Made by a program: the position numbers and the translations under genes. A DNA stretch of 64,000 bases, taken from IMG/VR virus record IMGVR_UViG_3300049793_000366, positions 372,001 through 436,000 of that record, one strand, 5' to 3'. The notes under the pieces are model-generated. The model made no database searches. It had not been told where the DNA came from and saw only the letters and a list, made by a program, of their open reading frames with translations. Shown here one piece after another: positions 22,071-63,402 of this stretch (position 1 is the first letter of the stretch; every line of letters begins with the position of its first letter).

Positions 22071-22151
22071 TGTCTGGTGGTGAAATGGCAGCCACATCCG
22101 CCTTTGAAGCGGATGCCGAAAGGCGTGTAGGTTCGACCCCTACCCAGACAG
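22071..22151 (+). tRNA. tRNA-Gln(UUG) with a long variable arm (type II body)
   Basis: TGTCTGG/CCAGACA, G73, TCCGC-CTTTGAA-GCGGA, variable arm GCC-GAAA-GGC. Confidence 0.8.
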
Positions 22152-22157
22152 CAACAT

Positions 22158-22230
22158 TGCGGAATCGTCTAACGGTTAGGATAACACCCTCTGAAGGTGT
22201 CTGGTGTGGGTTCGAATCCTACTTCCGCAA
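22158..22230 (+). tRNA. tRNA-Gln(CUG)
   Basis: TGCGGAA/TTCCGCA, ACACC-CTCTGAA-GGTGT. Confidence 0.88.
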
Positions 22231-22235
22231 CAAAT

Positions 22236-22309
22236 TGTTCTATGGTGTAACTGGTTAACACGTCCGACTTTGACTCGGAAGACTCTAGGTTCGAATCCTA
22301 GTAGAACAG
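22236..22309 (+). tRNA. tRNA-Gln(UUG)
   Basis: TGTTCTA/TAGAACA, TCCGA-CTTTGAC-TCGGA. Confidence 0.9.
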
Positions 22310-22318
22310 CTAAAATAT

Positions 22319-22389
22319 TCCTCTTTGGTCTAATGGTATGACGTTGGGTTTTGGTCCCAAAGGTGGTGGTTCGATTCCATCAAGAGGGA
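22319..22389 (+). tRNA. tRNA-Gln(UUG)
   Basis: TCCTCTT/AAGAGGG, TTGGG-TTTTGGT-CCCAA. Confidence 0.88.
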
Positions 22390-22420
22390 CAACAAATAGT
22401 AATAATTAAATACAAACAAT

Positions 22421-24040
22421 ATGAATTTCATTGAAGACAAAATAACAGAAAGGGGAATAATTGAAAGTTTTAAACTTCGTTTTCCACCAGAAAATAATGG
22501 CTTTTTACATATCGGTCATGCGAAATCTATATGCCTTAACTTTGGTTTAGCTGAAAAATATAACAGACCATGTAATTTAAGATTCGATGATACTAATCCA
22601 TCAAATGAATCAAATGAATTCACAGAGGCTATTAAGAGAGACATAGCATGGTTGGGTTATAGACCAGCTAATATTCATCACACATCAGACTACTTCGCAT
22701 TCCTATATGATTGTGCTAAGACATTAATCAGAAAAGGATTAGCATACGTTGATGATTCAACATCAGAAGAGATTGCGGCACTTAAAGGTACAACAACTTT
22801 AGCTGGTAGACCATCGCCTTATTACTCAAGAACAATCGAAGAGAATCTTGATTTGTTCGAGAGAATGAAGAACGGTGAATTCAATGAAGGTTCTAAAATA
22901 TTAAGAGCTAAGATTGACATGGCTTCTCCTAATATGATTTTGAGAGATCCTGTTTTATATCGTATCATCAACAAGACACACCACCACGTTGGTGATGCTT
23001 GGAAGATTTATCCAATGTATGACTTCGCTCACCCATTGTCTGACTTCATTGAAGGTATCACTGATTCACTTTGCACTTTAGAGTTCGAAGTACACAGACC
23101 ATTATATATGTGGGTACTTGAGAATTGTGATTTGAATGGTACATTACCAGAAGAAACAGAGTTCGCTCGTTTGAACATTGACTACACAGTTATGTCAAAG
23201 AGAAAGCTTAAGAGATTAGTTGAAGAGGGATTTGTTTCTGGTTGGGATGATCCAAGACTTCCAACAATTTCAGGTTTGAGAAGAAGAGGATATACACCAG
23301 CATCTATTAAAGATTTCTGTGATAGAATTGGTGTTACTCGTAAAGAGTCTGTTGTATCACACTTGTTACTTGAAGAGTGTTTAAGAAATGATTTAAACAA
23401 AGTAGCTAATCGTGTGATGGGTATAATGGATCCTGTTAAGTTAGTTATTACCAATTGGGATAACGGTACTGAAATGGTTGAGATTGAAAACAACCCAGAA
23501 GATGAAAGTGCTGGTAAGAGAATGGTTCCATTCAGTGGTGAAATATACATTGAACGTGAAGACTTCAGAGAAGAAGCTGATAACAAGTTTTTCCGATTGA
23601 AGCCAGGTTGTGAAGTAAGATTGAAGGGTGCTTGTGTAATCATGGCTAATGAAATTATCAAAGATTCAAATGGTAACATCATTGAAATCAGATGTACTTA
23701 TGACCCTAACAGTCGGTCAGGTATGACACTTGATAGAAAAGTTAAGGGTACTATTCACTGGGTATCAGTTGAACACGCTATTAAAGGAGAAGTTAAAGAG
23801 TACAGTAACTTATTCAATGTGGCTAATCCTGATGAGTTAGAAGACTTCGTAGAAGGATTGAACAAAGAGTCATTGATAGTTAATACGAATGCTTACTTTG
23901 AACCAGAAGCTTTGAATTGTTCAATCGATAAGCCAGTTCAAATGGTAAGAAAAGGTTACTATGTGATGGATAAAGATTCAACAACTAATTGCTTGATTTT
24001 CAATAAAACAGTTAATTTAAAAGAAGACCGTAATAAATGA
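22421..24040 (+). CDS. glnS: Glutaminyl-tRNA synthetase
   Basis: RFPPENNGFLHIGHAK, RFDDTNP, VMSKRKL, VKGTIHWVS. Confidence 0.95.
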   Translation: MNFIEDKITERGIIESFKLRFPPENNGFLHIGHAKSICLNFGLAEKYNRPCNLRFDDTNPSNESNEFTEAIKRDIAWLGYRPANIHHTSDYFAFLYDCAKTLIRKGLAYVDDSTSEEIAALKGTTTLAGRPSPYYSRTIEENLDLFERMKNGEFNEGSKILRAKIDMASPNMILRDPVLYRIINKTHHHVGDAWKIYPMYDFAHPLSDFIEGITDSLCTLEFEVHRPLYMWVLENCDLNGTLPEETEFARLNIDYTVMSKRKLKRLVEEGFVSGWDDPRLPTISGLRRRGYTPASIKDFCDRIGVTRKESVVSHLLLEECLRNDLNKVANRVMGIMDPVKLVITNWDNGTEMVEIENNPEDESAGKRMVPFSGEIYIEREDFREEADNKFFRLKPGCEVRLKGACVIMANEIIKDSNGNIIEIRCTYDPNSRSGMTLDRKVKGTIHWVSVEHAIKGEVKEYSNLFNVANPDELEDFVEGLNKESLIVNTNAYFEPEALNCSIDKPVQMVRKGYYVMDKDSTTNCLIFNKTVNLKEDRNK

Positions 24041-35697: not shown

Positions 35698-35771
35698 TGA
35701 GGGGTAGCTCAGTGGTAAGAGCGCCGGGACGGAAAACCCGGAGGTCGTTGGTTCGAATCTAACCCCCTCTA
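35698..35771 (+). tRNA. Initiator-like tRNA body with an 8-nt anticodon loop ACGGAAAA
   Basis: U1-U72 mismatch, GAGGGG/CCCCTC, CCGGG/CCCGG stem, AGGTC variable loop. Confidence 0.6.
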
Positions 35772-35779
35772 CAAAGAAT

Positions 35780-57280: not shown

Positions 57281-57624
57281 GTTATATAGATCCAAATAGT
57301 AAAAGTAGTGAGATACAACCCACATCGATGGTTTATGTGAGTATTAACCCAATGAGTGGTGGTAAGCACATGAAATATGAATCAACAATCGTGATGAAGC
57401 TTGGTGGTATTGATAATGCTACCAACCTAAGTGAAATGGTTGATGAATACATATCAGTTTGTGAAATACAAAATGGGTTCTATGAAGACTATCATCGCAA
57501 TAGTTTAAGTGAACTACATAAAGCTTATGTTGCTAATAGCACAAGCAGAGCAATCGCACTAGAGAAGATGCGAGTTTTTTTAAAGGAACAAATAAGAAGA
57601 GAACAACTAAGAAAAATATTATGA
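57277..57624 (+). CDS. Hypothetical protein
   Basis: C-terminal RREQLRKIL. Confidence 0.55.
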   Translation: MSYIDPNSKSSEIQPTSMVYVSINPMSGGKHMKYESTIVMKLGGIDNATNLSEMVDEYISVCEIQNGFYEDYHRNSLSELHKAYVANSTSRAIALEKMRVFLKEQIRREQLRKIL

Positions 57625-58328
57625 AAACATTAAATAACTGGAGAGTAGCTCCTGATTATCCAAGAATACCACATCTATCTAAAGACATTTCAAATATGTC
57701 GAATGATGATATTGTGTTAGATACTGCTACATTTCCATTCACAGCAGACTATCAAGAAAAAGTAGATGGTGCCAACTTAGGTATCTCTTGGAACAATGAT
57801 GGTCCCGTTGTACGAAATAGAAACTTCGTATTGAATAAAGGCTATACTAAAACCAAAACACCATCTAAAAGACAATTCGTTAATACATGGCAGTGGATTC
57901 ACAAACACGAAGATGATATCAAAGAAGTCATTGATAGATGGATGGCACCACTGACAATCTATGGTGAGTGGATGTGGGCTAAACATTCGATAGAATATAA
58001 TAAGCTACCAGACTTATTCTTAGCTTATGATATTTGGTCTCCATTAGATAATAAATTCGTATCTGTTAGTAAGATGGAAGAATTGCTTGATGGTACAAAC
58101 ATTAGGTATATCCCATCAATCAGAAAAGAGTTTAAAACTATTAGCGATGTTAAGCAAACATCAGAGTTGAAGTCTAAATATACGGATGATTATGCAGAGG
58201 GTATAGTAATCAAAATTTGCTCAGAAAGATGGGTTGAGAAAACATACAAGGTTGTCAATCAGTTCTACAACAGAAGAGACGATTTCAATGATGTAGATAT
58301 TATCCGGAATAAGGTGCTTGATATTTAA
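57621..58328 (+). CDS. Second ATP-dependent RNA ligase (Rnl2/Rnl3-like nucleotidyltransferase domain)
   Basis: YPRIPHL, QEKVDGANLGI, YGEW, AYDI, EGIVIK, YKVV. Confidence 0.82.
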   Translation: MKTLNNWRVAPDYPRIPHLSKDISNMSNDDIVLDTATFPFTADYQEKVDGANLGISWNNDGPVVRNRNFVLNKGYTKTKTPSKRQFVNTWQWIHKHEDDIKEVIDRWMAPLTIYGEWMWAKHSIEYNKLPDLFLAYDIWSPLDNKFVSVSKMEELLDGTNIRYIPSIRKEFKTISDVKQTSELKSKYTDDYAEGIVIKICSERWVEKTYKVVNQFYNRRDDFNDVDIIRNKVLDI

Positions 58329-58384
58329 TACAACTATTTGCTTTTTTGATATAAAATTAAAAAATAGTATTATATCAAATCAGC

Positions 58385-58909
58385 ATGAGAAAGCAGAAAC
58401 AGCAACTACATAGACTCAACAATCAAATCACACACGAAACAGTGAGAGTGATATCTGATGAGAATGGACAGAGGTTATCAACTGTAATGTCAATAAATGA
58501 GGCACTGCAATTAGCAGATAGTCTTGCTGTTGATTTAGTAGAGGTAACACCTAATGCTAACCCACCTATTTGTAGAGTTGTGGAGTATGGTAAATTCCTT
58601 TATGAGTTAAAGAAAAAGGAAAAAGAAAACTCTAAGAAATCTCAACAACAAGAAGTTAAAGAGTTAAGACTAACCCCTCACACTGATGAACATGACTTCG
58701 AGTTTAAGCTAAAACACGCAGAGGCTTGGCTTAAGAAAGGAGATAAAGTAAAAGCTACTGTCTTCTTCAAAGGAAGAGAAATAGTTTACCAGGATCAAGG
58801 TAGAGTACTTTTGCTTAAATTAGCTGATACATTAAAGGATATTTCAAAGGCTGAGAGTTTACCTATTCTGATGGGTAAACGAATGTCGATAACGATATCA
58901 CCTAAATAA
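58385..58909 (+). CDS. infC: Translation initiation factor IF-3
   Basis: DLVEVTPNANPPICRVVEYGKFLYE, KELRL, GDKVK, GRE. Confidence 0.95.
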   Translation: MRKQKQQLHRLNNQITHETVRVISDENGQRLSTVMSINEALQLADSLAVDLVEVTPNANPPICRVVEYGKFLYELKKKEKENSKKSQQQEVKELRLTPHTDEHDFEFKLKHAEAWLKKGDKVKATVFFKGREIVYQDQGRVLLLKLADTLKDISKAESLPILMGKRMSITISPK

Positions 58910-58978: not shown

Positions 58979-59272
58979 ATGAATAATAAGATTTACAACT
59001 TCACTCCAAAACAGCGGAAGAAAGATTTACGTTTCTATAAATTAAGTCTCTATGATGAATCACCACTTCAATTTCTATTAGAAGATGAAGAATGGTGTCA
59101 TATATCCAAGTGGTATAGCTGGACTAGTCATGCTCCTGCTTGGTACAGAAGACAAAAGAATAAAAAACTAAAAGCTAAAGCTAAACAGGCTTTGTATAAA
59201 CAATTAACGTATGGTATAGATGATATTAACTATCCGTTATTCACTAAAAATGCTGGCTATGATTGGTGGTAA
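58979..59272 (+). CDS. Hypothetical basic protein
   Basis: 97 aa. Confidence 0.5.
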   Translation: MNNKIYNFTPKQRKKDLRFYKLSLYDESPLQFLLEDEEWCHISKWYSWTSHAPAWYRRQKNKKLKAKAKQALYKQLTYGIDDINYPLFTKNAGYDWW

Positions 59273-59301
59273 AAAATATTTTAAAAAAAATTAAAAATAA
59301 A

Positions 59302-59332
59302 TTTGCAATATCAAAAAATGTCCATATTTTTG
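59302..59332 (+). promoter_or_regulatory. Bacteroidota-type promoter of the HU/ncRNA operon
   Basis: TTTG 59302-59305, TATTTTTG 59325-59332. Confidence 0.65.
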
Positions 59333-59414
59333 TGACATAAATAAGAAGAATAAATTTTAACAAAAAATATTTAGTTAGAATGTAAACTTTTTAAAACATC
59401 AACATTATAACATC

Positions 59415-59441
59415 TCACTTCGGTGAAAACGTTCTTTAAAA
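59415..59441 (+). promoter_or_regulatory. Putative boxB-boxA antitermination element
   Basis: Hairpin TCAC-TTCG-GTGA followed by GTTCTTTAAAA. Confidence 0.5.
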
Positions 59442-59476
59442 TATTTCATTTTTGTTTTTTAAATACTGAGCTAAAT

Positions 59477-59549
59477 GGCGCTGTCGTCTACTGGAAGGAC
59501 GCTACTTTGTTCAAAGTGGAAACATACGGTTCGAATCCTATCGGCGCTA
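59477..59549 (+). tRNA. Glu-like tRNA-like RNA with extended anticodon arm and bulged T stem
   Basis: GGCGCTG/CGGCGCT; CTACTTT-GTTC-AAAGTGG; ATA[C]GG/CCTAT. Confidence 0.55.
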
Positions 59550-59665
59550 CAAATGTTAAAAGTTAGAAAAATATTTAAACTTCTCTAAACTTTTAAAAAC
59601 TCAAAGATTATAACATATAACTTTGTACAACATAACAAGCAAAGTAAATAAAAAACAAAAGAAAA

Positions 59666-59938
59666 ATGAATAAAGCTGAATTAATTGATGTTATTGCGAA
59701 AGAAGCAAACTTAACAAAAACATCCGCTACACAAGCGTTAGACGCAACTCTTGCTGCTATCACTAGCTCTTTGAGCAATGGCGACAAGGTAACACTTGTA
59801 GGTTTTGGTACATTTTCAGTTTCTAAGAGAGCAGCCCGCAAAGGTCGCAATCCAAAAACTGGTGAAGTAATCCAAATCTCTGCAAAGAATGTTGCAAAGT
59901 TCAAAGCTGGTTCTGAGTTATCTTCTTCAGTGAAGTAA
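59666..59938 (+). CDS. hup: HU family DNA-binding protein
   Basis: [34 protein letters not shown]. Confidence 0.96.
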
Positions 59939-59986
59939 TTTAAAATCACGCGAGAGTTGATTCCAAAAGAGTAAACTCTCGTACAT

Positions 59987-60060
59987 GGCGCAATCGTCTA
60001 CCGGAAGGACGCTACCCCATTTCAGGGTAGAAACGTATGGTTCGAATCCTGCTTGCGCTA
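59987..60060 (+). tRNA. Glu-like tRNA-like RNA with 6-bp anticodon stem and bulged T stem
   Basis: GGCGCAA/TTGCGCT; CTACCC-CATTTCA-GGGTAG; GTA[T]GG/CCTGC. Confidence 0.6.
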
Positions 60061-60069
60061 CAATGTGCC

Positions 60070-60460
60070 AATCTCGGTTGGCTTCTCAGTGAGGTGAACA
60101 CTGTGCTATATATGAGAAGTTGTTGTCAACTTTTATAACTAAAAAACACATTGCGTTCATTTTAATACGGCAAATTTTCACTGGTTAAAAACCGAGCGTA
60201 AATGTCTTGTAACGTAAGAGCTTAATAAATTGGGTGGAAGATACGCCGCCAAGTATTGAGTTAAACACATTAAGTTGTGTGAGTCGATGCGAACAAAAAG
60301 GTCCAGTAGTTAGACTGCCTTTAAGGTTTATGATTCATAATAGAATTATATTCTTTACTGAAAATGAATACACAACTAGGCCTGTGGTTGAGGAAGTTGA
60401 ACATCGATTAGATGTGAGAGTCTCCGAAATGTATTCAACAGTTCAAAAAGCTCTTACTTA
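60070..60460 (+). ncRNA. Unidentified structured RNA, about 400 nt
   Basis: Long-range pairs CTCGGTT/AACCGAG, GTAAGAGCTT/AAGCTCTTAC, GAATAC/GTATTC, GCTTCTCA/TGAGAAGT, plus many hairpins. Confidence 0.55.
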
Positions 60461-60490
60461 GCTTGTTTATAAGTAAAATTATTATAAGTT

Positions 60491-60500
60491 CGTTCTTTGA
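60491..60500 (+). promoter_or_regulatory. Putative boxA
   Basis: CGTTCTTTGA just before the large ncRNA. Confidence 0.45.
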
Positions 60501-60518
60501 TTTAAAAATTTAAAAATA

Positions 60519-61272
60519 TTGGGCAGTATAGTGTCCTACACAAATCTTCGGGTTTGTGTGAAAATAAAGCTGGTAACAGTCTATAAAGCAAACGTAGAGT
60601 TTGCGACTTCTTCACGGGAGTTTAACTATAAAATACTTAGTATGTCTTTGATGGACGAATGTTCAATGAGATATCATCATCCAACTATGGTGATTGCGTC
60701 AGAAATGATTACAAGAAAGGTAGGGTATTATGTGCGAAATGTCCAAACATTAGTGCGTGTGCTATCTGATTAAGTTATACAACGTATAGTTTATATTCGC
60801 AAGGGTATTTATTATACATGGGCGACTGAAGCAGACGTGAGCTGGAAACTCACAGAAGGGCGTTTAGTATTTTGTTCTCAAAAGGAACGAAGCTATACCA
60901 CACAGGCGTCCTTCATACAAATAGTTGTTATCTAACATGATTTTGAAATATCAAAAAAGCAAAATCTGTGTGGCGCTGGAGTCGAAAGGTCTCTAATTCC
61001 ATCCGTTGCGAAACGAAGATGGAGTCTAATATCCCGCAAGGATATGGATTTAGCTAAGAAAAATCTAGTGGGCGCAACCCTTAGTCAGTTCGCAAGACTG
61101 AATAGACAGAGTAGCAGTTGAGTAGACAAACTGGTCAAACAGTTCTAGCGATACGAGTGATTACCGTAAGGAATCGAGACTGACAGAATACTTATCGCAA
61201 GGTGAGTGGATAATGAGAGAACCAATAATGCTCAGAAAGATTTGTCGACCAAAGCTATAATCTCAAGCTTTT
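60519..61272 (+). ncRNA. Large ornate ncRNA, GOLLD-like (about 750 nt)
   Basis: Five CGCAA-loop hairpins, UUCG/GCGA/GAAA loops, long-range helices (GAAGGGCG/CGTCCTTC, CACACAG/CTGTGTG); tRNA-flanked phage context; family call is from memory. Confidence 0.6.
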
Positions 61273-61276
61273 TTAC

Positions 61277-61350
61277 GGCGTGTTCGTCTATCGGAAGGAC
61301 GCTACCCCATTTCAGGGTAGAAACGTATGGTTCGAATCCTGCACACGCTA
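61277..61350 (+). tRNA. Glu-like tRNA-like RNA, near copy of 59987-60060
   Basis: Identical from GGAAGGAC through the T arm; acceptor GGCGTGT/ACACGCT co-varies. Confidence 0.6.
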
Positions 61351-61368
61351 CTGAGTAAAATAAAATAT

Positions 61369-61481
61369 GGCGAGTTCTTCTAGCGGACTAAGCTGAACAA
61401 CGCACTTCTACTGTGTTATTCGCTTAAAGGATGCCGTTCTTTTCAGAATGGAGACAGCAGGTTCGAATCCTCTACTCGCTA
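61369..61481 (+). tRNA. tRNA-like RNA of the same family with a hairpin inserted in the D loop
   Basis: GGCGAGT/ACTCGCT; CCGTTCT-TTTC-AGAATGG; AG[C]AGG/CCTCT; about 35-nt D-loop insert. Confidence 0.5.
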
Positions 61482-61530
61482 CAAACAGTAATGCCAAGTT
61501 TTCCAGACTCTTTTATTGTTTACCATGAAG

Positions 61531-61562
61531 AAGCCGATGTGATTTATCATATCGGTTTTTTT
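61531..61562 (+). terminator. Intrinsic terminator ending the ncRNA operon
   Basis: aagccgatgtga-tt-tatcatatcggtt + T tract. Confidence 0.75.
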
Positions 61563-61563
61563 A

Positions 61564-61595
61564 TTTGGTCATGTCCGGAATTATGATTATATTTG
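61564..61595 (+). promoter_or_regulatory. Bacteroidota-type promoter
   Basis: TTTG 61564-61567, TATATTTG 61588-61595. Confidence 0.72.
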
Positions 61596-61635
61596 TAACT
61601 GAATAATTTTTTTCACTTAAAACCAAAAAACAAAC

Positions 61636-63402
61636 ATGAAAGTATTTGCAATTATCTTATCACTAATCCTTGGTTGGTTATGTTATTATTTCGGAATGCC
61701 AACATTATCATTCGGCTTCATTGGATGGCCATCAACATTAATGGTAATGTCTATTCCACTTATTCTACTTGATGTAGAAGAACGAGAAGGTATGTTTAAA
61801 ACAGGAGTGGGTATAGCAGTCTTTGGTTTGTTTTTCTTAACCATTGTACCGATGCTTACAAGTTGGTCACTATTTCGCTCTGACGCATATAAATCATTAC
61901 TTGGTACAGTAAACGAAAAGAGTATAAACTCCACAATTGAACCTATCAATCCTGAGAATATTGTAATAATTGATGAACAAACAGCACATCGATTAGCTGA
62001 TAAATGCTTAAATGAATATCCGGATGCTCGTGCTATTGGTTCAGAAGTTGAACTTGGTTCACTTACACTACAAAAAGTTGGTGATAAGATGTACTATGTT
62101 GCTCCGCTATTACACCGCTCATTCTTTAAGTGGTCTTCTAACTCACAGGGTACACCAGGTTATGTTATGATTAACACAACGAATGACAAAGATGTTAAGT
62201 TTGTACAAGAAGTAAATGGTAAAAAACTACGCATTAAATATCAAGAGGGTGCCTGCTTTGGTGATAATATAGAACGACACATTTATACATCTGGTTATAA
62301 AACAAAAGGAGTATCAGATTATTCTTTTGAAGTTGATGATAATGGTACACCTTATTACATCGCCACTATATATGAGAAACAAGTTGGATATGCTGGTGAA
62401 GATGCTACTGGTGTTATAACGGTTGATGTTGCCTCTGGTGAGATTACAGAATACTCAGTAAAAGAAACACCTACATGGATTGATAGAATTTACCCAGTTG
62501 ACTTTATTAAGACACAGGTTGATGATTGGGGTTATTTCTCACATGGTTGGTTAAATCCATCTGACAAAGATAGGTTAGAGTCAACTGATGGTATATCGTT
62601 AGTATATGGTAATGATGGTCAGTGCTACTTCTATTGTGGTTTAACATCTGTTGGTAAGGATCAATCATCTATTGGATTTTTAATGATAAACTCTCGAACT
62701 AAGGAAGTTAATTACTATCATCAAGGTGGTGCTACCGAACAAGCCGCTATGGCATCTGCTGAGGGTAAAGTACAAGAGAAAGGTTATGCCGCAAGTCACC
62801 CAAGACCATATAACATTGATGGTATATGGACATATGTTATGGCTCTGAAAGATAAAGAGGGATTAATCAAAATGGTTGCTCTGGTATCAGTTAAGAATTA
62901 TGATATCGTTGGTGTTGGTCAAGACATAAAAGACGCTATACGTCAATACAAATCAGCTTTAAACTCAAGTGGTAACGTCACTACATTTGAAGGTAAGAAG
63001 TCAGACTTTGAAGTAACTGGTAAGATAACCCGATTCTCTGTTGATAATCGAAGTGGTAACTCTTATTACTATTTTATGATTGATACTATTAAAACTAAAA
63101 TATTCGTAGCAACATCCAATATATCTGATGAAGTAGTTTTAACACAGCTTAATGATATAGCAACTGTAACGTTTGCTGATGCTAATTCATATCTTATTGA
63201 TGTAAGAACCTTTGATAATAAGGGACTGAGCTTATCTAAGAGCGAAAGTCAGAATAAAGTTGAAAAATATTTTAAAACAGTTAACGATTCAATTAGTATA
63301 AAGCAAGACGCAAATGATGCAAATGCTTTATGGGACACATTGAGTGAATCTAAAAAAGCTGAAATTTTGAAATCATATCAAAAGACAAACACTAAAAAGT
63401 AA
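61636..63402 (+). CDS. Membrane-anchored hypothetical protein
   Basis: N-terminal hydrophobic helices followed by a large soluble domain. Confidence 0.7.
   Translation: MKVFAIILSLILGWLCYYFGMPTLSFGFIGWPSTLMVMSIPLILLDVEEREGMFKTGVGIAVFGLFFLTIVPMLTSWSLFRSDAYKSLLGTVNEKSINSTIEPINPENIVIIDEQTAHRLADKCLNEYPDARAIGSEVELGSLTLQKVGDKMYYVAPLLHRSFFKWSSNSQGTPGYVMINTTNDKDVKFVQEVNGKKLRIKYQEGACFGDNIERHIYTSGYKTKGVSDYSFEVDDNGTPYYIATIYEKQVGYAGEDATGVITVDVASGEITEYSVKETPTWIDRIYPVDFIKTQVDDWGYFSHGWLNPSDKDRLESTDGISLVYGNDGQCYFYCGLTSVGKDQSSIGFLMINSRTKEVNYYHQGGATEQAAMASAEGKVQEKGYAASHPRPYNIDGIWTYVMALKDKEGLIKMVALVSVKNYDIVGVGQDIKDAIRQYKSALNSSGNVTTFEGKKSDFEVTGKITRFSVDNRSGNSYYYFMIDTIKTKIFVATSNISDEVVLTQLNDIATVTFADANSYLIDVRTFDNKGLSLSKSESQNKVEKYFKTVNDSISIKQDANDANALWDTLSESKKAEILKSYQKTNTKK

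What the first reader, a model, noticed from the sequence alone, without database searches (positions are those of the whole stretch)
59477..61481. Family of four non-decoding tRNA-like RNAs with a bulged T stem flanking HU and the large ncRNAs
59477, 59987, 61277 and 61369 share a Glu-like D arm and a one-base bulge in the T stem, and have 6-7 bp anticodon stems. Two copies are identical from the D loop to the T arm, while their acceptor stems differ by compensatory changes, which indicates selection on structure. They bracket the large RNAs, and this operon has no attenuator but has boxA-like sites. Inference: punctuation marks for RNase P/Z release of the ncRNAs, structural partners of them, or decoys.
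Basis: partly seen in the sequence, partly recalled or inferred. Interest (0 to 1): 0.68.

Follow-up and report, generated by a model that had tools for sequence, protein, structure and literature searches.

The report
tRNA-Glu-like RNAs flanking phage GOLLD
Four real, related tRNA-shaped RNAs derived from tRNA-Glu, whose anticodon arm is one or two bases too long for normal decoding, bracket an HU gene and a GOLLD giant RNA in a 508-kb phage; the family recurs in other huge phages, so it is selected, probably as RNA-processing marks and tRNA-Glu mimics.

Summary
TL1 (59477-59549), TL2 (59987-60060), TL3 (61277-61350) and TL4 (61369-61481) are the only four such elements in the 507,910-bp phage genome. 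All have a tRNA-Glu-type D arm, a 4-nt variable region and a T-stem bulge. The anticodon arm is 18-19 nt instead of 17: 6-7 bp closing on GUUC, UUUC or CAUUUCA. TL4 also carries a ~40-nt D-loop insert.

They lie in one apparent transcription unit: promoter-like box, TL1, HU, hairpin, TL2, about 1.2 kb of RNA ending in a GOLLD 3' domain, TL3, TL4, terminator.

New here: the family is conserved, with strong covariation, in other huge phages. The order GOLLD, TL, TL-with-D-insert, terminator recurs in two further phage genomes and several metagenomic lineages. Two complete phages carry stand-alone TL units and have no GOLLD. In other GOLLD loci, ordinary tRNAs occupy the same abutting slots.

Best reading (confidence about 0.5): non-decoding tRNA-Glu derivatives, cut out by RNase P and RNase Z, which sets the ends of GOLLD and the HU mRNA. 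The released TLs probably have a function of their own as tRNA-Glu mimics. Quadruplet (GAAN) decoding is not excluded. No expression data could be obtained.

The parts
59298..59332 (+). Bacteroidota-type promoter-like site: a TTTG about 20 nt upstream of the -7 box TATTTTTG at 59325
   Evidence: Motif scan. Inference only; there is no transcript data.
59477..59549 (+). TL1: tRNA-Glu-like RNA with a 7-bp anticodon stem closing on GUUC and a bulged C in the T stem
   Evidence: Rfam tRNA 41.0 bits; R1 82.7 bits; parse.
59618..59625 (+). Second promoter-like -7 box (TAACTTTG), 40 nt upstream of the HU start codon
59666..59938 (+). HU-family DNA-binding protein gene (90 aa)
   Evidence: PF00216, 115 bits. 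DNA similarity to the HU genes of Bacillus phage 0305phi8-36 and phage G.
59950..59982 (+). Stable hairpin between the HU stop codon and TL2, with no U tract after it. It would be the 3' end of the HU mRNA if RNase P cuts at 59986/59987.
   Evidence: Fold at -15.1 kcal/mol, z = -5.75. The role is inferred.
59987..60060 (+). TL2: tRNA-Glu-like RNA with a 6-bp anticodon stem, 7-nt loop CAUUUCA and a bulged U in the T stem
   Evidence: Rfam tRNA 39.6 bits; ARAGORN 'Lys ttt'; R1 83.3 bits.
60061..60854 (+). About 790 nt of non-coding RNA between TL2 and the GOLLD 3' domain. It is presumed to be a divergent or extended GOLLD 5' domain, or an extra RNA.
   Evidence: No PHROG hit for the two internal ORFs. 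No sequence similarity to the 5' domains of the G002 and G006 GOLLDs. 200-350 nt longer than the tRNA-to-GOLLD-end distance in other loci.
60855..61269 (+). GOLLD RNA, conserved 3' domain
   Evidence: RF02032, 232.2 bits, model positions 1-416.
61277..61350 (+). TL3: near-copy of TL2 with three compensatory acceptor pairs. It starts 8 nt after the GOLLD 3' end.
   Evidence: Rfam tRNA 39.9 bits; R1 85.4 bits; TL2/TL3 differences.
61369..61481 (+). TL4: tRNA-Glu-like RNA with a ~40-nt hairpin insert in the D loop, a 7-bp anticodon stem closing on UUUC, and a T-stem bulge in a shifted register
   Evidence: R1 63.3 bits; parse. Counterparts with D-loop inserts in the same position relative to GOLLD occur in G002 (L013 4879-4985) and in metagenomes.
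61522..61567 (+). Intrinsic terminator: a long hairpin followed by a U tract, ending the TL1...TL4 unit
   Evidence: Fold at -30.1 kcal/mol for 61482-61580, z = -4.98. The next promoter-like box is at 61588.

Best explanation
The four elements belong to a conserved family of tRNA-Glu-derived, tRNA-shaped RNAs found in huge phages whose promoter motifs look Bacteroidota-like. They keep the acceptor/T-arm minihelix, the D/T-loop elbow and the tRNA-Glu 'augmented D helix'. Their anticodon arm is one or two bases too long: positions 32-38 form a Watson-Crick pair and an extra base sits 5' of UUC. Many members also carry a T-stem bulge or a D-loop insert. They are therefore most likely not ordinary ribosomal decoders.

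In this window they appear to be transcribed as one unit with HU and the GOLLD RNA. RNase P would cut at each TL 5' end, and RNase Z or an equivalent enzyme after A73. That would release the HU mRNA with its 3' hairpin and a GOLLD RNA with defined ends. These are the same abutting slots that ordinary tRNAs fill in other GOLLD loci.

The excised TLs of 74-113 nt would be stable products. They probably have a role of their own that depends on looking like tRNA-Glu, because they also exist as stand-alone genes.

Shown here: the anatomy, paralogy, covariation, conservation and synteny. Inferred: co-transcription, cleavage, non-decoding and any mimic function.
For: Anatomy and uniqueness in the genome:
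-.

Covariation:
- 15 of 23 pairs show double changes in 11 sequences, with 0 of 500 shuffles reaching the covariation score.
- In 53 distinct sequences the covariation score is 0.668 against 0.173 for shuffles. Pair 32-38 is C-G 43, U-A 5, U.G 2, A-U 1.

Conserved cassette:
- G002 (L013): tRNA-Met, GOLLD, TL, TL with D-insert, terminator.
- G006 (L137): TL, GOLLD, TL, terminator.
- Nine further metagenomic GOLLD-to-TL junctions joined by a U-rich 9-14-nt linker.
- G002 and G006 share syntenic flanking proteins at 30-53% identity. The window shares one flanking protein with G002 at 44%. The arrangement is therefore old.

Ordinary tRNAs in the same slots:
- About 21 of 81 GOLLD-motif loci have a normal tRNA starting 10-28 nt after the GOLLD 3' end.
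- The literature already notes tRNAs next to and inside GOLLD.

One transcription unit:
- Promoter-like boxes lie only at 59325 and 59618. No box lies before TL2, GOLLD, TL3 or TL4, and the next one is at 61588 after the terminator.
- The HU-TL2 hairpin has no U tract.

Own function:
- Stand-alone TL-TL units with their own promoter-like box and terminator exist; one is antisense to its neighbours (L014).
- TLs occur in GOLLD-free complete genomes G001 and G004.

tRNA-Glu identity elements:
- U11-A24, U13.G22, A46 and absence of residue 47 are kept. These are the major E. coli GluRS determinants (PMC9976931).
Against: - Transcription, cleavage and stability are all unverified.
- U33 and a purine at position 37 are kept in most homologues. 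The 33-37 'pair' shows no double changes (U-A 25, U.G 18, unpaired 10). That pattern fits a working expanded anticodon loop as well as a closed hairpin.
- RNase P needs neither the Glu-type D arm nor the NUUC loop, so punctuation alone does not explain what is conserved.
- Most GOLLD-motif loci (about 60 of 81) have no abutting tRNA, so GOLLD does not generally need one.
- The D-stem invariance in the larger alignments is partly built in, because the search patterns fixed it.
Confidence: 0.5

Rival explanations
1. Stand-alone tRNA-Glu mimic as the primary function. One version is a decoy or sponge for a host factor that recognises tRNA-Glu, such as an anticodon nuclease of the RloC/PrrC type, Cas13 collateral cleavage, or GluRS. 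Another is a Glu carrier that is charged but kept off the ribosome. Adjacency to GOLLD would then be ordinary tRNA-island clustering.
For: - TLs occur as independent units and in phages without GOLLD.
- tRNA-Glu identity elements and the central UUC are kept.
- tRNA-Glu is a documented target of RloC (PMC3874168) and of activated Cas13a (PMC11042736).
- An RNA ligase gene (PF09414, 57621-58328) lies 1.1 kb upstream, which suggests a tRNA-repair setting.
- The phage encodes its own GluRS.
- The T-stem bulge lies in the part of the T stem that EF-Tu contacts. That point rests on general knowledge and is an inference.
Against: - No partner gene co-occurs consistently. G004 has TLs but no class Ic synthetase, and neighbouring genes are not conserved.
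- The very tight, conserved abutment to the GOLLD 3' end in at least seven lineages is more than loose clustering.
- No biochemical data exist.
Confidence: 0.2
2. Expanded-anticodon tRNA-Glu that still decodes. The 8-nt loop Y32-U33-N-U-U-C-R37-R38 would read GAAN quadruplets, causing a +1 frameshift, or GAA in an unusual way.
For: - The extra base always lies 5' of an invariant UUC and is the variable one: U 54, A 6, C 4 among 64 distinct metagenomic matches, and G in TL1.
- U33 and R37 are largely kept, without covariation.
- The same genome holds a tRNA-Phe-like gene with an open 8-nt loop at 35698-35772.
- Similar expanded-loop Glu genes with normal T stems sit in other phage tRNA arrays. 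In some Pirellulaceae chromosomes they sit where most sampled relatives carry a tRNA-Glu(CUC) gene.
Against: - TL2 and TL3 have a 9-nt stretch with no U33 (C-A instead). TL1 and TL4 can close to a tetraloop.
- T-stem bulges (12 of 19) and D-loop inserts of 16-111 nt (7 of 19) are hard to reconcile with EF-Tu and ribosome binding.
- Several relatives have degenerate outer anticodon-stem pairs.
- In-frame GAA followed by A is not specifically avoided in this genome: 28.9%, the same as AAA-A at 29.4% and CAA-A at 31.6%.
Confidence: 0.12
3. The TLs are not cut off. They stay covalently attached to GOLLD as tRNA-shaped handles or cargo on the 14-mer nanocage.
For: - The cryo-EM authors propose that covalently linked tRNAs are displayed or enclosed by GOLLD cages.
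- A review suggests 'inhibited storage' of an embedded tRNA-Phe.
- The linker between the GOLLD 3' hairpin and the TL is short, U-rich and conserved.
Against: - TLs keep everything RNase P and RNase Z need.
- TLs exist without GOLLD.
- TL1 is separated from GOLLD by the HU gene.
- The published cage forms without flanking tRNAs.
Confidence: 0.1
4. Decaying tRNA-Glu pseudogenes with no function.
For: - tRNA finders score them poorly.
- A 'pseudo tRNA' inside a mycobacterial GOLLD was not detectably expressed (PMC6582537).
Against: - Compensatory changes keep all four helices across dozens of diverged copies.
- The same odd features recur in phages whose flanking proteins are only 30-50% identical.
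- T-loop and D-loop tertiary bases are invariant.
Confidence: 0.03

Closest known systems
tRNAs adjacent to or embedded in GOLLD RNA (Weinberg 2009 as cited; Kretsch et al. bioRxiv 2024.12.08.627333; Behra et al. PMC6582537; review PMC12990946)
   Same: GOLLD lies in phage tRNA islands. env-38 GOLLD lies downstream of a tRNA-Met, tRNAs or a 'pseudo tRNA' occur inside the linker, and the G002 relative here also has tRNA-Met at its 5' edge.
   Different: Here the flanking elements are a dedicated, conserved family of tRNA-Glu derivatives with an expanded or closed anticodon arm, T-stem bulges and D-loop inserts. They sit at both ends of GOLLD rather than in the linker, and they also exist in GOLLD-free phages. 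I found no description of this in the searchable literature.
tRNA punctuation and tRNA-like processing signals, such as mitochondrial polycistrons and MALAT1 mascRNA (the latter mentioned in PMC9976931; the rest is general knowledge)
   Same: A tRNA-shaped module with a non-functional anticodon region, placed at the boundaries of other RNAs, where RNase P and RNase Z would cut.
   Different: No cleavage data here. This is a bacterial phage setting. The modules keep amino-acid-specific (Glu) identity elements and occur as stand-alone genes.
+1 frameshift-suppressor and quadruplet-decoding tRNAs with 8-nt anticodon loops (SufB2, bioRxiv 2020.12.31.424971; qtRNAs, PMC9094753)
   Same: One extra nucleotide in the anticodon loop next to an otherwise intact anticodon; U33 and R37 mostly retained.
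   Different: Positions 32-38 form a Watson-Crick pair and 33-37 can pair, closing the loop. TL2 and TL3 have two extra bases and no U33. T-stem bulges and D-loop inserts are absent from known suppressors.
Phage tRNAs that counter tRNA-targeting defences, for example the T5 tRNA-Lys variant against PARIS (PMC11455837, listed; otherwise general knowledge)
   Same: Phage-encoded tRNA-type RNAs with altered anticodon loops. tRNA-Glu is a known nuclease target.
   Different: Those tRNAs still decode and replace the cleaved host tRNA. The TLs look unable to decode, so they could only act as decoys.
Ordinary tRNA-Glu(UUC)
   Same: D arm GUCU...GGAC with U11-A24, U13.G22 and A46; 4-nt variable region; UUC; T loop UUCGAAU. 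The nearest ordinary tRNAs in the genome by R1 score are its tRNA-Glu genes.
   Different: Anticodon arm of 18-19 nt rather than 17. A T-stem bulge. 49-55 of 74 identical positions to the genome's own UUC-anticodon tRNA-Glu genes, against 57-67 among TL1-3.

Membership tests
tRNA (Rfam RF00005) | Score above the family gathering threshold of 29 bits | tested here: met
   TL1 41.0, TL2 39.6 and TL3 39.9 bits. TL4 is not reported because of its D-loop insert.
tRNA (functional decoder) | 5-bp anticodon stem with a 7-nt loop, U33 and purine 37 | tested here: not met
   The arms are 18-19 nt. TL1 has 7 bp + GUUC, TL4 has 7 bp + UUUC, and TL2 and TL3 have 6 bp + CAUUUCA, which puts A at loop position 33 and C at 37.
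tRNA (functional decoder) | Regular 5-bp T stem, the EF-Tu contact surface | tested here: not met
   All four have 6 nt opposite 5 nt, a single bulged pyrimidine.
tRNA-Glu | Augmented D helix: U11-A24, U13.G22..A46 and no residue 47 (PMC9976931) | tested here: met
   D stem GUCU/GGAC and variable region AAAC or AGAC in TL1-4; TL4 has UUCU/GGAU.
tRNA-Glu | U34-U35-C36-A37 presented in a normal anticodon loop | tested here: inconclusive
   UUC is present at the centre of every arm, but in an expanded or closable loop. Whether GluRS accepts it cannot be tested with these tools.
tRNA-Glu | Aminoacylation with glutamate | not testable with these tools
   Needs a charging assay with host GluRS and with the phage GluRS (G000:13984-15510).
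GOLLD-associated tRNA(-like) elements | Direct abutment to a GOLLD RNA that passes the Rfam threshold | tested here: met
   TL2 ends at 60060, at the start of the ncRNA block. TL3 starts 8 nt after the GOLLD 3' end at 61269. The same holds in G002, G006 and metagenomes.
RNase P / RNase Z processing signal (punctuation) | Cleavage at the 5' end and after the discriminator base | not testable with these tools
   The acceptor/T minihelix and the elbow are intact. No read data are available.
Quadruplet-decoding / frameshift-suppressor tRNA | Open 8-nt anticodon loop on an otherwise standard tRNA body | tested here: inconclusive
   One extra base lies 5' of UUC, and U33 and R37 are mostly kept in homologues. 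However, 32-38 is a Watson-Crick pair, bulges and inserts are present, and GAA-A is not avoided.
Other described tRNA-like RNAs in Rfam (YrlA/Y RNA-like, tmRNA, viral TLS and others) | Match to a curated model | tested here: not met
   A permissive cmscan of 59250-61650 at E up to 1 returned only tRNA, GOLLD and one chance miRNA hit.

The most novel reading that the evidence does not exclude
These TLs would belong to a widespread, undescribed class of tRNA-Glu paralogues with a one-base-expanded anticodon arm (Y-U-N-UUC-R-R on a 32-38 Watson-Crick pair). The class is found in huge phages, in other phage tRNA arrays and in some Pirellulaceae chromosomes. Its members would have left ordinary translation. 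Either they are charged with Glu but excluded from EF-Tu and the ribosome, acting as a non-ribosomal Glu-tRNA, or as a bait for tRNA-Glu-directed defence nucleases; or they read GAAN quadruplets as a phage-controlled frameshift switch. In GOLLD phages they would be functionally coupled to the RNA nanocage, as its cargo or its processing handles.
Probability: 0.15. Interest if true: 0.85.

Novelty: new variant of a known kind. Interest (0 to 1): 0.62.

Why it matters
GOLLD is one of the largest bacterial and phage non-coding RNAs. It was recently shown to form a 14-mer nanocage, and its function is unknown. Its link to tRNAs is the main functional clue.

This locus and its relatives show that in one GOLLD lineage the flanking positions are held by a dedicated, conserved family of tRNA-Glu look-alikes, not by working tRNAs. 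What is selected at those positions is therefore tRNA shape, and perhaps Glu identity, rather than decoding.

That gives concrete constructs for testing how GOLLD ends are made and whether tRNA-like domains are cage cargo.

Separately, a conserved tRNA-Glu paralogue with an expanded anticodon arm, a T-stem bulge and tolerated D-loop expansions is a candidate for a new non-translational tRNA function, or for natural quadruplet decoding. Annotation pipelines currently miss it or mislabel it: ARAGORN called one of the four, as Lys.

Tried and rejected
- Close relatives in GenBank phages: only HU and one tRNA-like hit were found.
- Scan of bacterial genomes with the first pattern: 95 hits, against about 140 expected by chance by my own estimate. 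Only two were real TL-like genes (Pirellulaceae). Several others were an unrelated element duplicating the 5' half of tRNA-Glu.
- Partner-gene search: class Ic synthetase genes are present in G000, G001, G002 and G006 but not in G004, so there is no strict co-occurrence. Flanking proteins are not conserved beyond one gene of unknown function. The Pirellulaceae copy sits between clpP genes and an FKBP gene, which is uninformative.
- GAAA avoidance test for quadruplet decoding: no GAA-specific signal.
- Looking for undetected tRNA-like elements after GOLLD in loci where ARAGORN found none: a regex plus acceptor-pairing scan added nothing.
- Sequence similarity of 60061-60854 to other GOLLD 5' domains: none.
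- Possible ORFs inside the ncRNA block: no family hits.
- The pseudogene explanation is rejected on covariation.
Full report
**Setting**

The window is bases 372001-436000 of a 507,910-bp virus record, judged 97% complete. The whole genome carries 61 tRNA genes, among them an amber-suppressor-type tRNA, plus a tmRNA. It also encodes a GlnRS (window 22421-24040) and a bacterial-type GluRS. Rfam places a GOLLD 3' domain at 60855-61269 with 232 bits.

Genes just upstream of the finding encode:
- a nucleotidyltransferase-like protein;
- an RNA ligase (57621-58328);
- IF3 (58385-58909).

The gene between the first two elements is an HU protein (59666-59938).

**The observation**

All four elements exist as described. 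Rfam's tRNA model scores TL1, TL2 and TL3 at 40-41 bits. It has to insert one base in the 5' strand of the T stem and one or two bases in the anticodon loop. ARAGORN reports only TL2, as 'Lys UUU'.

A segment-by-segment parse gives each element:
- a 7-bp acceptor stem with G1.U72 and A73;
- U8 and C9;
- a GUCU/GGAC D stem;
- a 4-nt variable region (AAAC or AGAC);
- a UUCGAAU T loop;
- a T stem with six nucleotides opposite five.

The anticodon arm differs between copies:

| Element | Stem | Loop |
|---|---|---|
| TL1 | 7 bp | GUUC |
| TL2, TL3 | 6 bp | CAUUUCA |
| TL4 | 7 bp | UUUC |

TL4 also carries a ~40-nt hairpin in the D loop, after the GG.

TL2 and TL3 are identical over positions 16-66. 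They differ by three fully compensatory acceptor pairs and one D-loop base.

I built a covariance model (R1) from the family. It finds exactly these four in the genome at 63-85 bits. The genome's ordinary tRNA-Glu genes follow at 47-56 bits. The TLs are therefore a distinct tRNA-Glu-derived paralogue group and not chance cloverleaves.

**Layout**

Bacteroidota-style -7 boxes (TAnnTTTG) on the + strand lie at 59325 (before TL1), at 59618 (before HU) and at 61588. The last follows a strong hairpin-plus-U-tract terminator at about 61522-61567. No box lies before TL2, GOLLD, TL3 or TL4.

Between the HU stop codon and TL2 there is a very stable hairpin with no U tract (59950-59982, z = -5.8).

The simplest reading is one transcript: TL1, HU, hairpin, TL2, about 1.2 kb of RNA, TL3, TL4, terminator. 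This is an inference.

**Relatives**

A pattern scan of IMG/VR, followed by R1 searches, found the same design in other large phage genomes.

- **G002** (152-kb fragment, L013) has tRNA-Met, GOLLD, a TL starting 14 nt after the GOLLD end, an ~80-nt spacer, a TL with a D-loop insert, and a terminator.
- **G006** (483 kb, L137) has a TL with a D-insert, GOLLD, a second TL with a D-insert 10 nt after GOLLD, and a terminator.
- **Flanking proteins:** G002 and G006 share syntenic flanking proteins at only 30-53% identity. The window shares one downstream protein with G002 at 44%. The arrangement is therefore old.
- **Metagenomes:** nine further occurrences of the GOLLD-end, U-rich-linker, TL junction were found, representing several distinct lineages. 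Most are followed by the same conserved spacer and a D-insert TL.
- **GOLLD-free phages:** G001 (about 289 kb, the same phage as LR756504) and G004 (348 kb) are rated complete. They carry three and at least seven TLs and have no GOLLD. There the TLs are tandem pairs with their own promoter-like box and terminator. One pair lies antisense to both neighbouring genes (L014). One TL lies 15 nt upstream of an ORF's start codon.

Across 19 phage copies:

| Feature | Count |
|---|---|
| G1.U72 and A73 | 18 of 19 |
| Variable region of 4 nt | 19 of 19 |
| Anticodon arm of 7 positions + NUUC + 7 positions | 16 of 19 |
| T-stem bulge | 12 of 19 |
| D-loop insert of 16-111 nt | 7 of 19 |

**Is the structure selected?**

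Yes. In 11 sequences, 15 of 23 pairs show changes on both sides and no shuffle reaches the observed covariation score.

In 53 distinct sequences the covariation score is 0.668, against 0.173 for shuffles and at most 0.117 for structures slid by 1-3 columns.

Two caveats apply:
- The larger set was collected with a pattern that fixes the D stem, and I filtered it for at least 6 of 7 pairs in the acceptor and anticodon stems. Percent paired and D-stem invariance are therefore partly built in. The number of pair types is not.
- Within the anticodon arm, the 32-38 position behaves as a true pair (C-G 43, U-A 5, U.G 2, A-U 1). The 33-37 position is U-A (25) or U.G (18) or unpaired (10), with no double change.

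That second pattern fits a seventh closing pair. It equally fits retention of U33 and a purine at 37, as in a working but expanded loop.

**What occupies these slots elsewhere**

I collected 81 loci by a conserved GOLLD 3' motif. In about 21 of them an ordinary tRNA starts 10-28 nt after the GOLLD end (Arg-ACG, Ile-UAU, Met-CAU). Many also have a tRNA ending about 860-1000 nt upstream, at the edge of the 5' domain. The rest have none.

The literature already records that GOLLD sits in tRNA islands, that env-38 lies downstream of tRNA-Met, and that tRNAs or a 'pseudo tRNA' can lie inside GOLLD. I found no description of a dedicated tRNA-Glu-like family at the GOLLD flanks.

**Mechanism**

What is common to all occupants of the flanking slots is the tRNA shape, which is the substrate for RNase P and RNase Z. 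The TLs keep an intact acceptor/T minihelix and D/T elbow. The HU gene ends in a hairpin 4 nt before TL2, and the unit has a single terminator.

I therefore favour co-transcription followed by excision of the TLs, which would define the ends of the HU mRNA and of GOLLD.

Punctuation alone does not explain three things:
- the stand-alone TL units;
- the presence of TLs in GOLLD-free phages;
- the retention of the tRNA-Glu 'augmented D helix', the absence of residue 47 and a central UUC. These are the major GluRS determinants in E. coli (PMC9976931).

So the excised TLs probably act as tRNA-Glu mimics in their own right. Candidates are:
- a decoy for defence nucleases aimed at tRNA-Glu. RloC naturally cleaves tRNA-Glu. 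[quoted passage not shown] An RNA ligase gene lies just upstream.
- a Glu carrier kept off the ribosome by the T-stem bulge.

Neither can be tested here.

**The main rival: decoding**

The extra base is always 5' of an invariant UUC and is itself variable (U, A, C or G), as expected for anticodons that read GAAN. Quadruplet readers can be made from every isoacceptor class.

Four observations argue against this for the window's copies:
- TL2 and TL3 have two extra bases and no U33.
- TL1 and TL4 close to tetraloops.
- The bulges and the large D-loop inserts are hard to fit with EF-Tu and the ribosome.
- In-frame GAA-A is no rarer than AAA-A or CAA-A in this genome.

I give this rival about 0.12.

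**Wider occurrence**

Glu-like genes with the same 18-nt arm but normal T stems and different acceptor types occur in other phage tRNA arrays (L010, L241 and L244).

They also occur in Pirellulaceae chromosomes:
- Five of 61 sampled genomes have one, plus G008, which was found separately.
- In four of those five, R1 found only one other tRNA-Glu-type match, the one inspected (G007) being UUC. Most other sampled genomes carry a tRNA-Glu(CUC) gene of the same acceptor type.
- G007 and G008 differ by compensatory changes.

Whether these are homologous to the phage TLs or convergent is open.

**Verdict**

I classify it as a new variant of a known kind: tRNA or tRNA-like elements associated with GOLLD. 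The function remains unverified.

Noticed in passing
window 35698-35772 (+): A tRNA-Phe-like gene with an open 8-nt anticodon loop (ACGGAAAA). ARAGORN reports a 4-base anticodon 'ggaa', and Rfam tRNA scores it at 53.6 bits. It sits next to two normal tRNA-Phe(GAA) genes and is a candidate expanded-anticodon tRNA.
   Followed up: partly
G000:121630-121702, G000:59956-60348 and G000:321617-321693 (outside the window): The phage genome encodes a tRNA with a CUA anticodon (amber-suppressor type; ARAGORN 'Pyl'), a tmRNA, and another odd tRNA with a 6-nt anticodon loop. Stop-codon recoding in this phage was not examined.
   Followed up: no
window 22071-24040 (+) and G000:13984-15510 (-): Four tRNA-Gln genes are followed directly by a phage GlnRS gene (716 bits to the NCBIfam GlnRS/YqeY-fusion model, 676 bits to glnS). 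A bacterial-type GluRS gene lies elsewhere in the genome (431 bits).
   Followed up: partly
L139 663-1511 (-) = G006:128462-129310: The related 483-kb phage encodes a 282-aa GluRS paralogue with the catalytic domain only and no anticodon-binding domain, in addition to a ~500-aa class Ic synthetase (not typed further).
   Followed up: no
L218 1704-2449, L216 3517-3926, also L186, L209, L192 and L177 (bacterial MAGs): The 5' half of tRNA-Glu(UUC), up to the anticodon loop, is duplicated upstream of the intact tRNA-Glu (about 330 nt in L216, and twice at that spacing in L218). Each copy is followed by two hairpins, and in L218 by a small ORF that looks GIY-YIG-like. This looks like a mobile element that inserts into the tRNA-Glu anticodon loop.
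   Followed up: partly
window 60061-60854 (+): The RNA between TL2 and the Rfam GOLLD 3' domain is about 790 nt. That is 200-350 nt longer than in other GOLLD loci, and it has no sequence similarity to the 5' domains of the G002 and G006 GOLLDs. It may hold an extra structured RNA.
   Followed up: partly
L013 4795-4878, L137 3625-3700, and metagenomic loci L284, L290, L309 and L329: A conserved spacer of about 80 nt follows the TL after GOLLD, before the second TL where one is present (core GUUUUCGUAGUGGUUAACUU ... CUCCACAC). It may be a small RNA released by TL processing. It is absent from the window, where TL3 and TL4 are 18 nt apart.
   Followed up: no
L014 (-) 3015-2955 and L008 (-): The stand-alone TL pairs of G003 and G004 are preceded by a conserved leader hairpin of about 65 nt (GGAAGUUUAA ... 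AAACUUCC), downstream of a TAACTTTG promoter-like box.
   Followed up: no
window 57621-58909 (+): RNA ligase (PF09414, 93 bits) and translation initiation factor IF3 genes lie immediately upstream of the TL/HU/GOLLD unit. The neighbourhood is rich in translation and tRNA-repair functions.
   Followed up: partly
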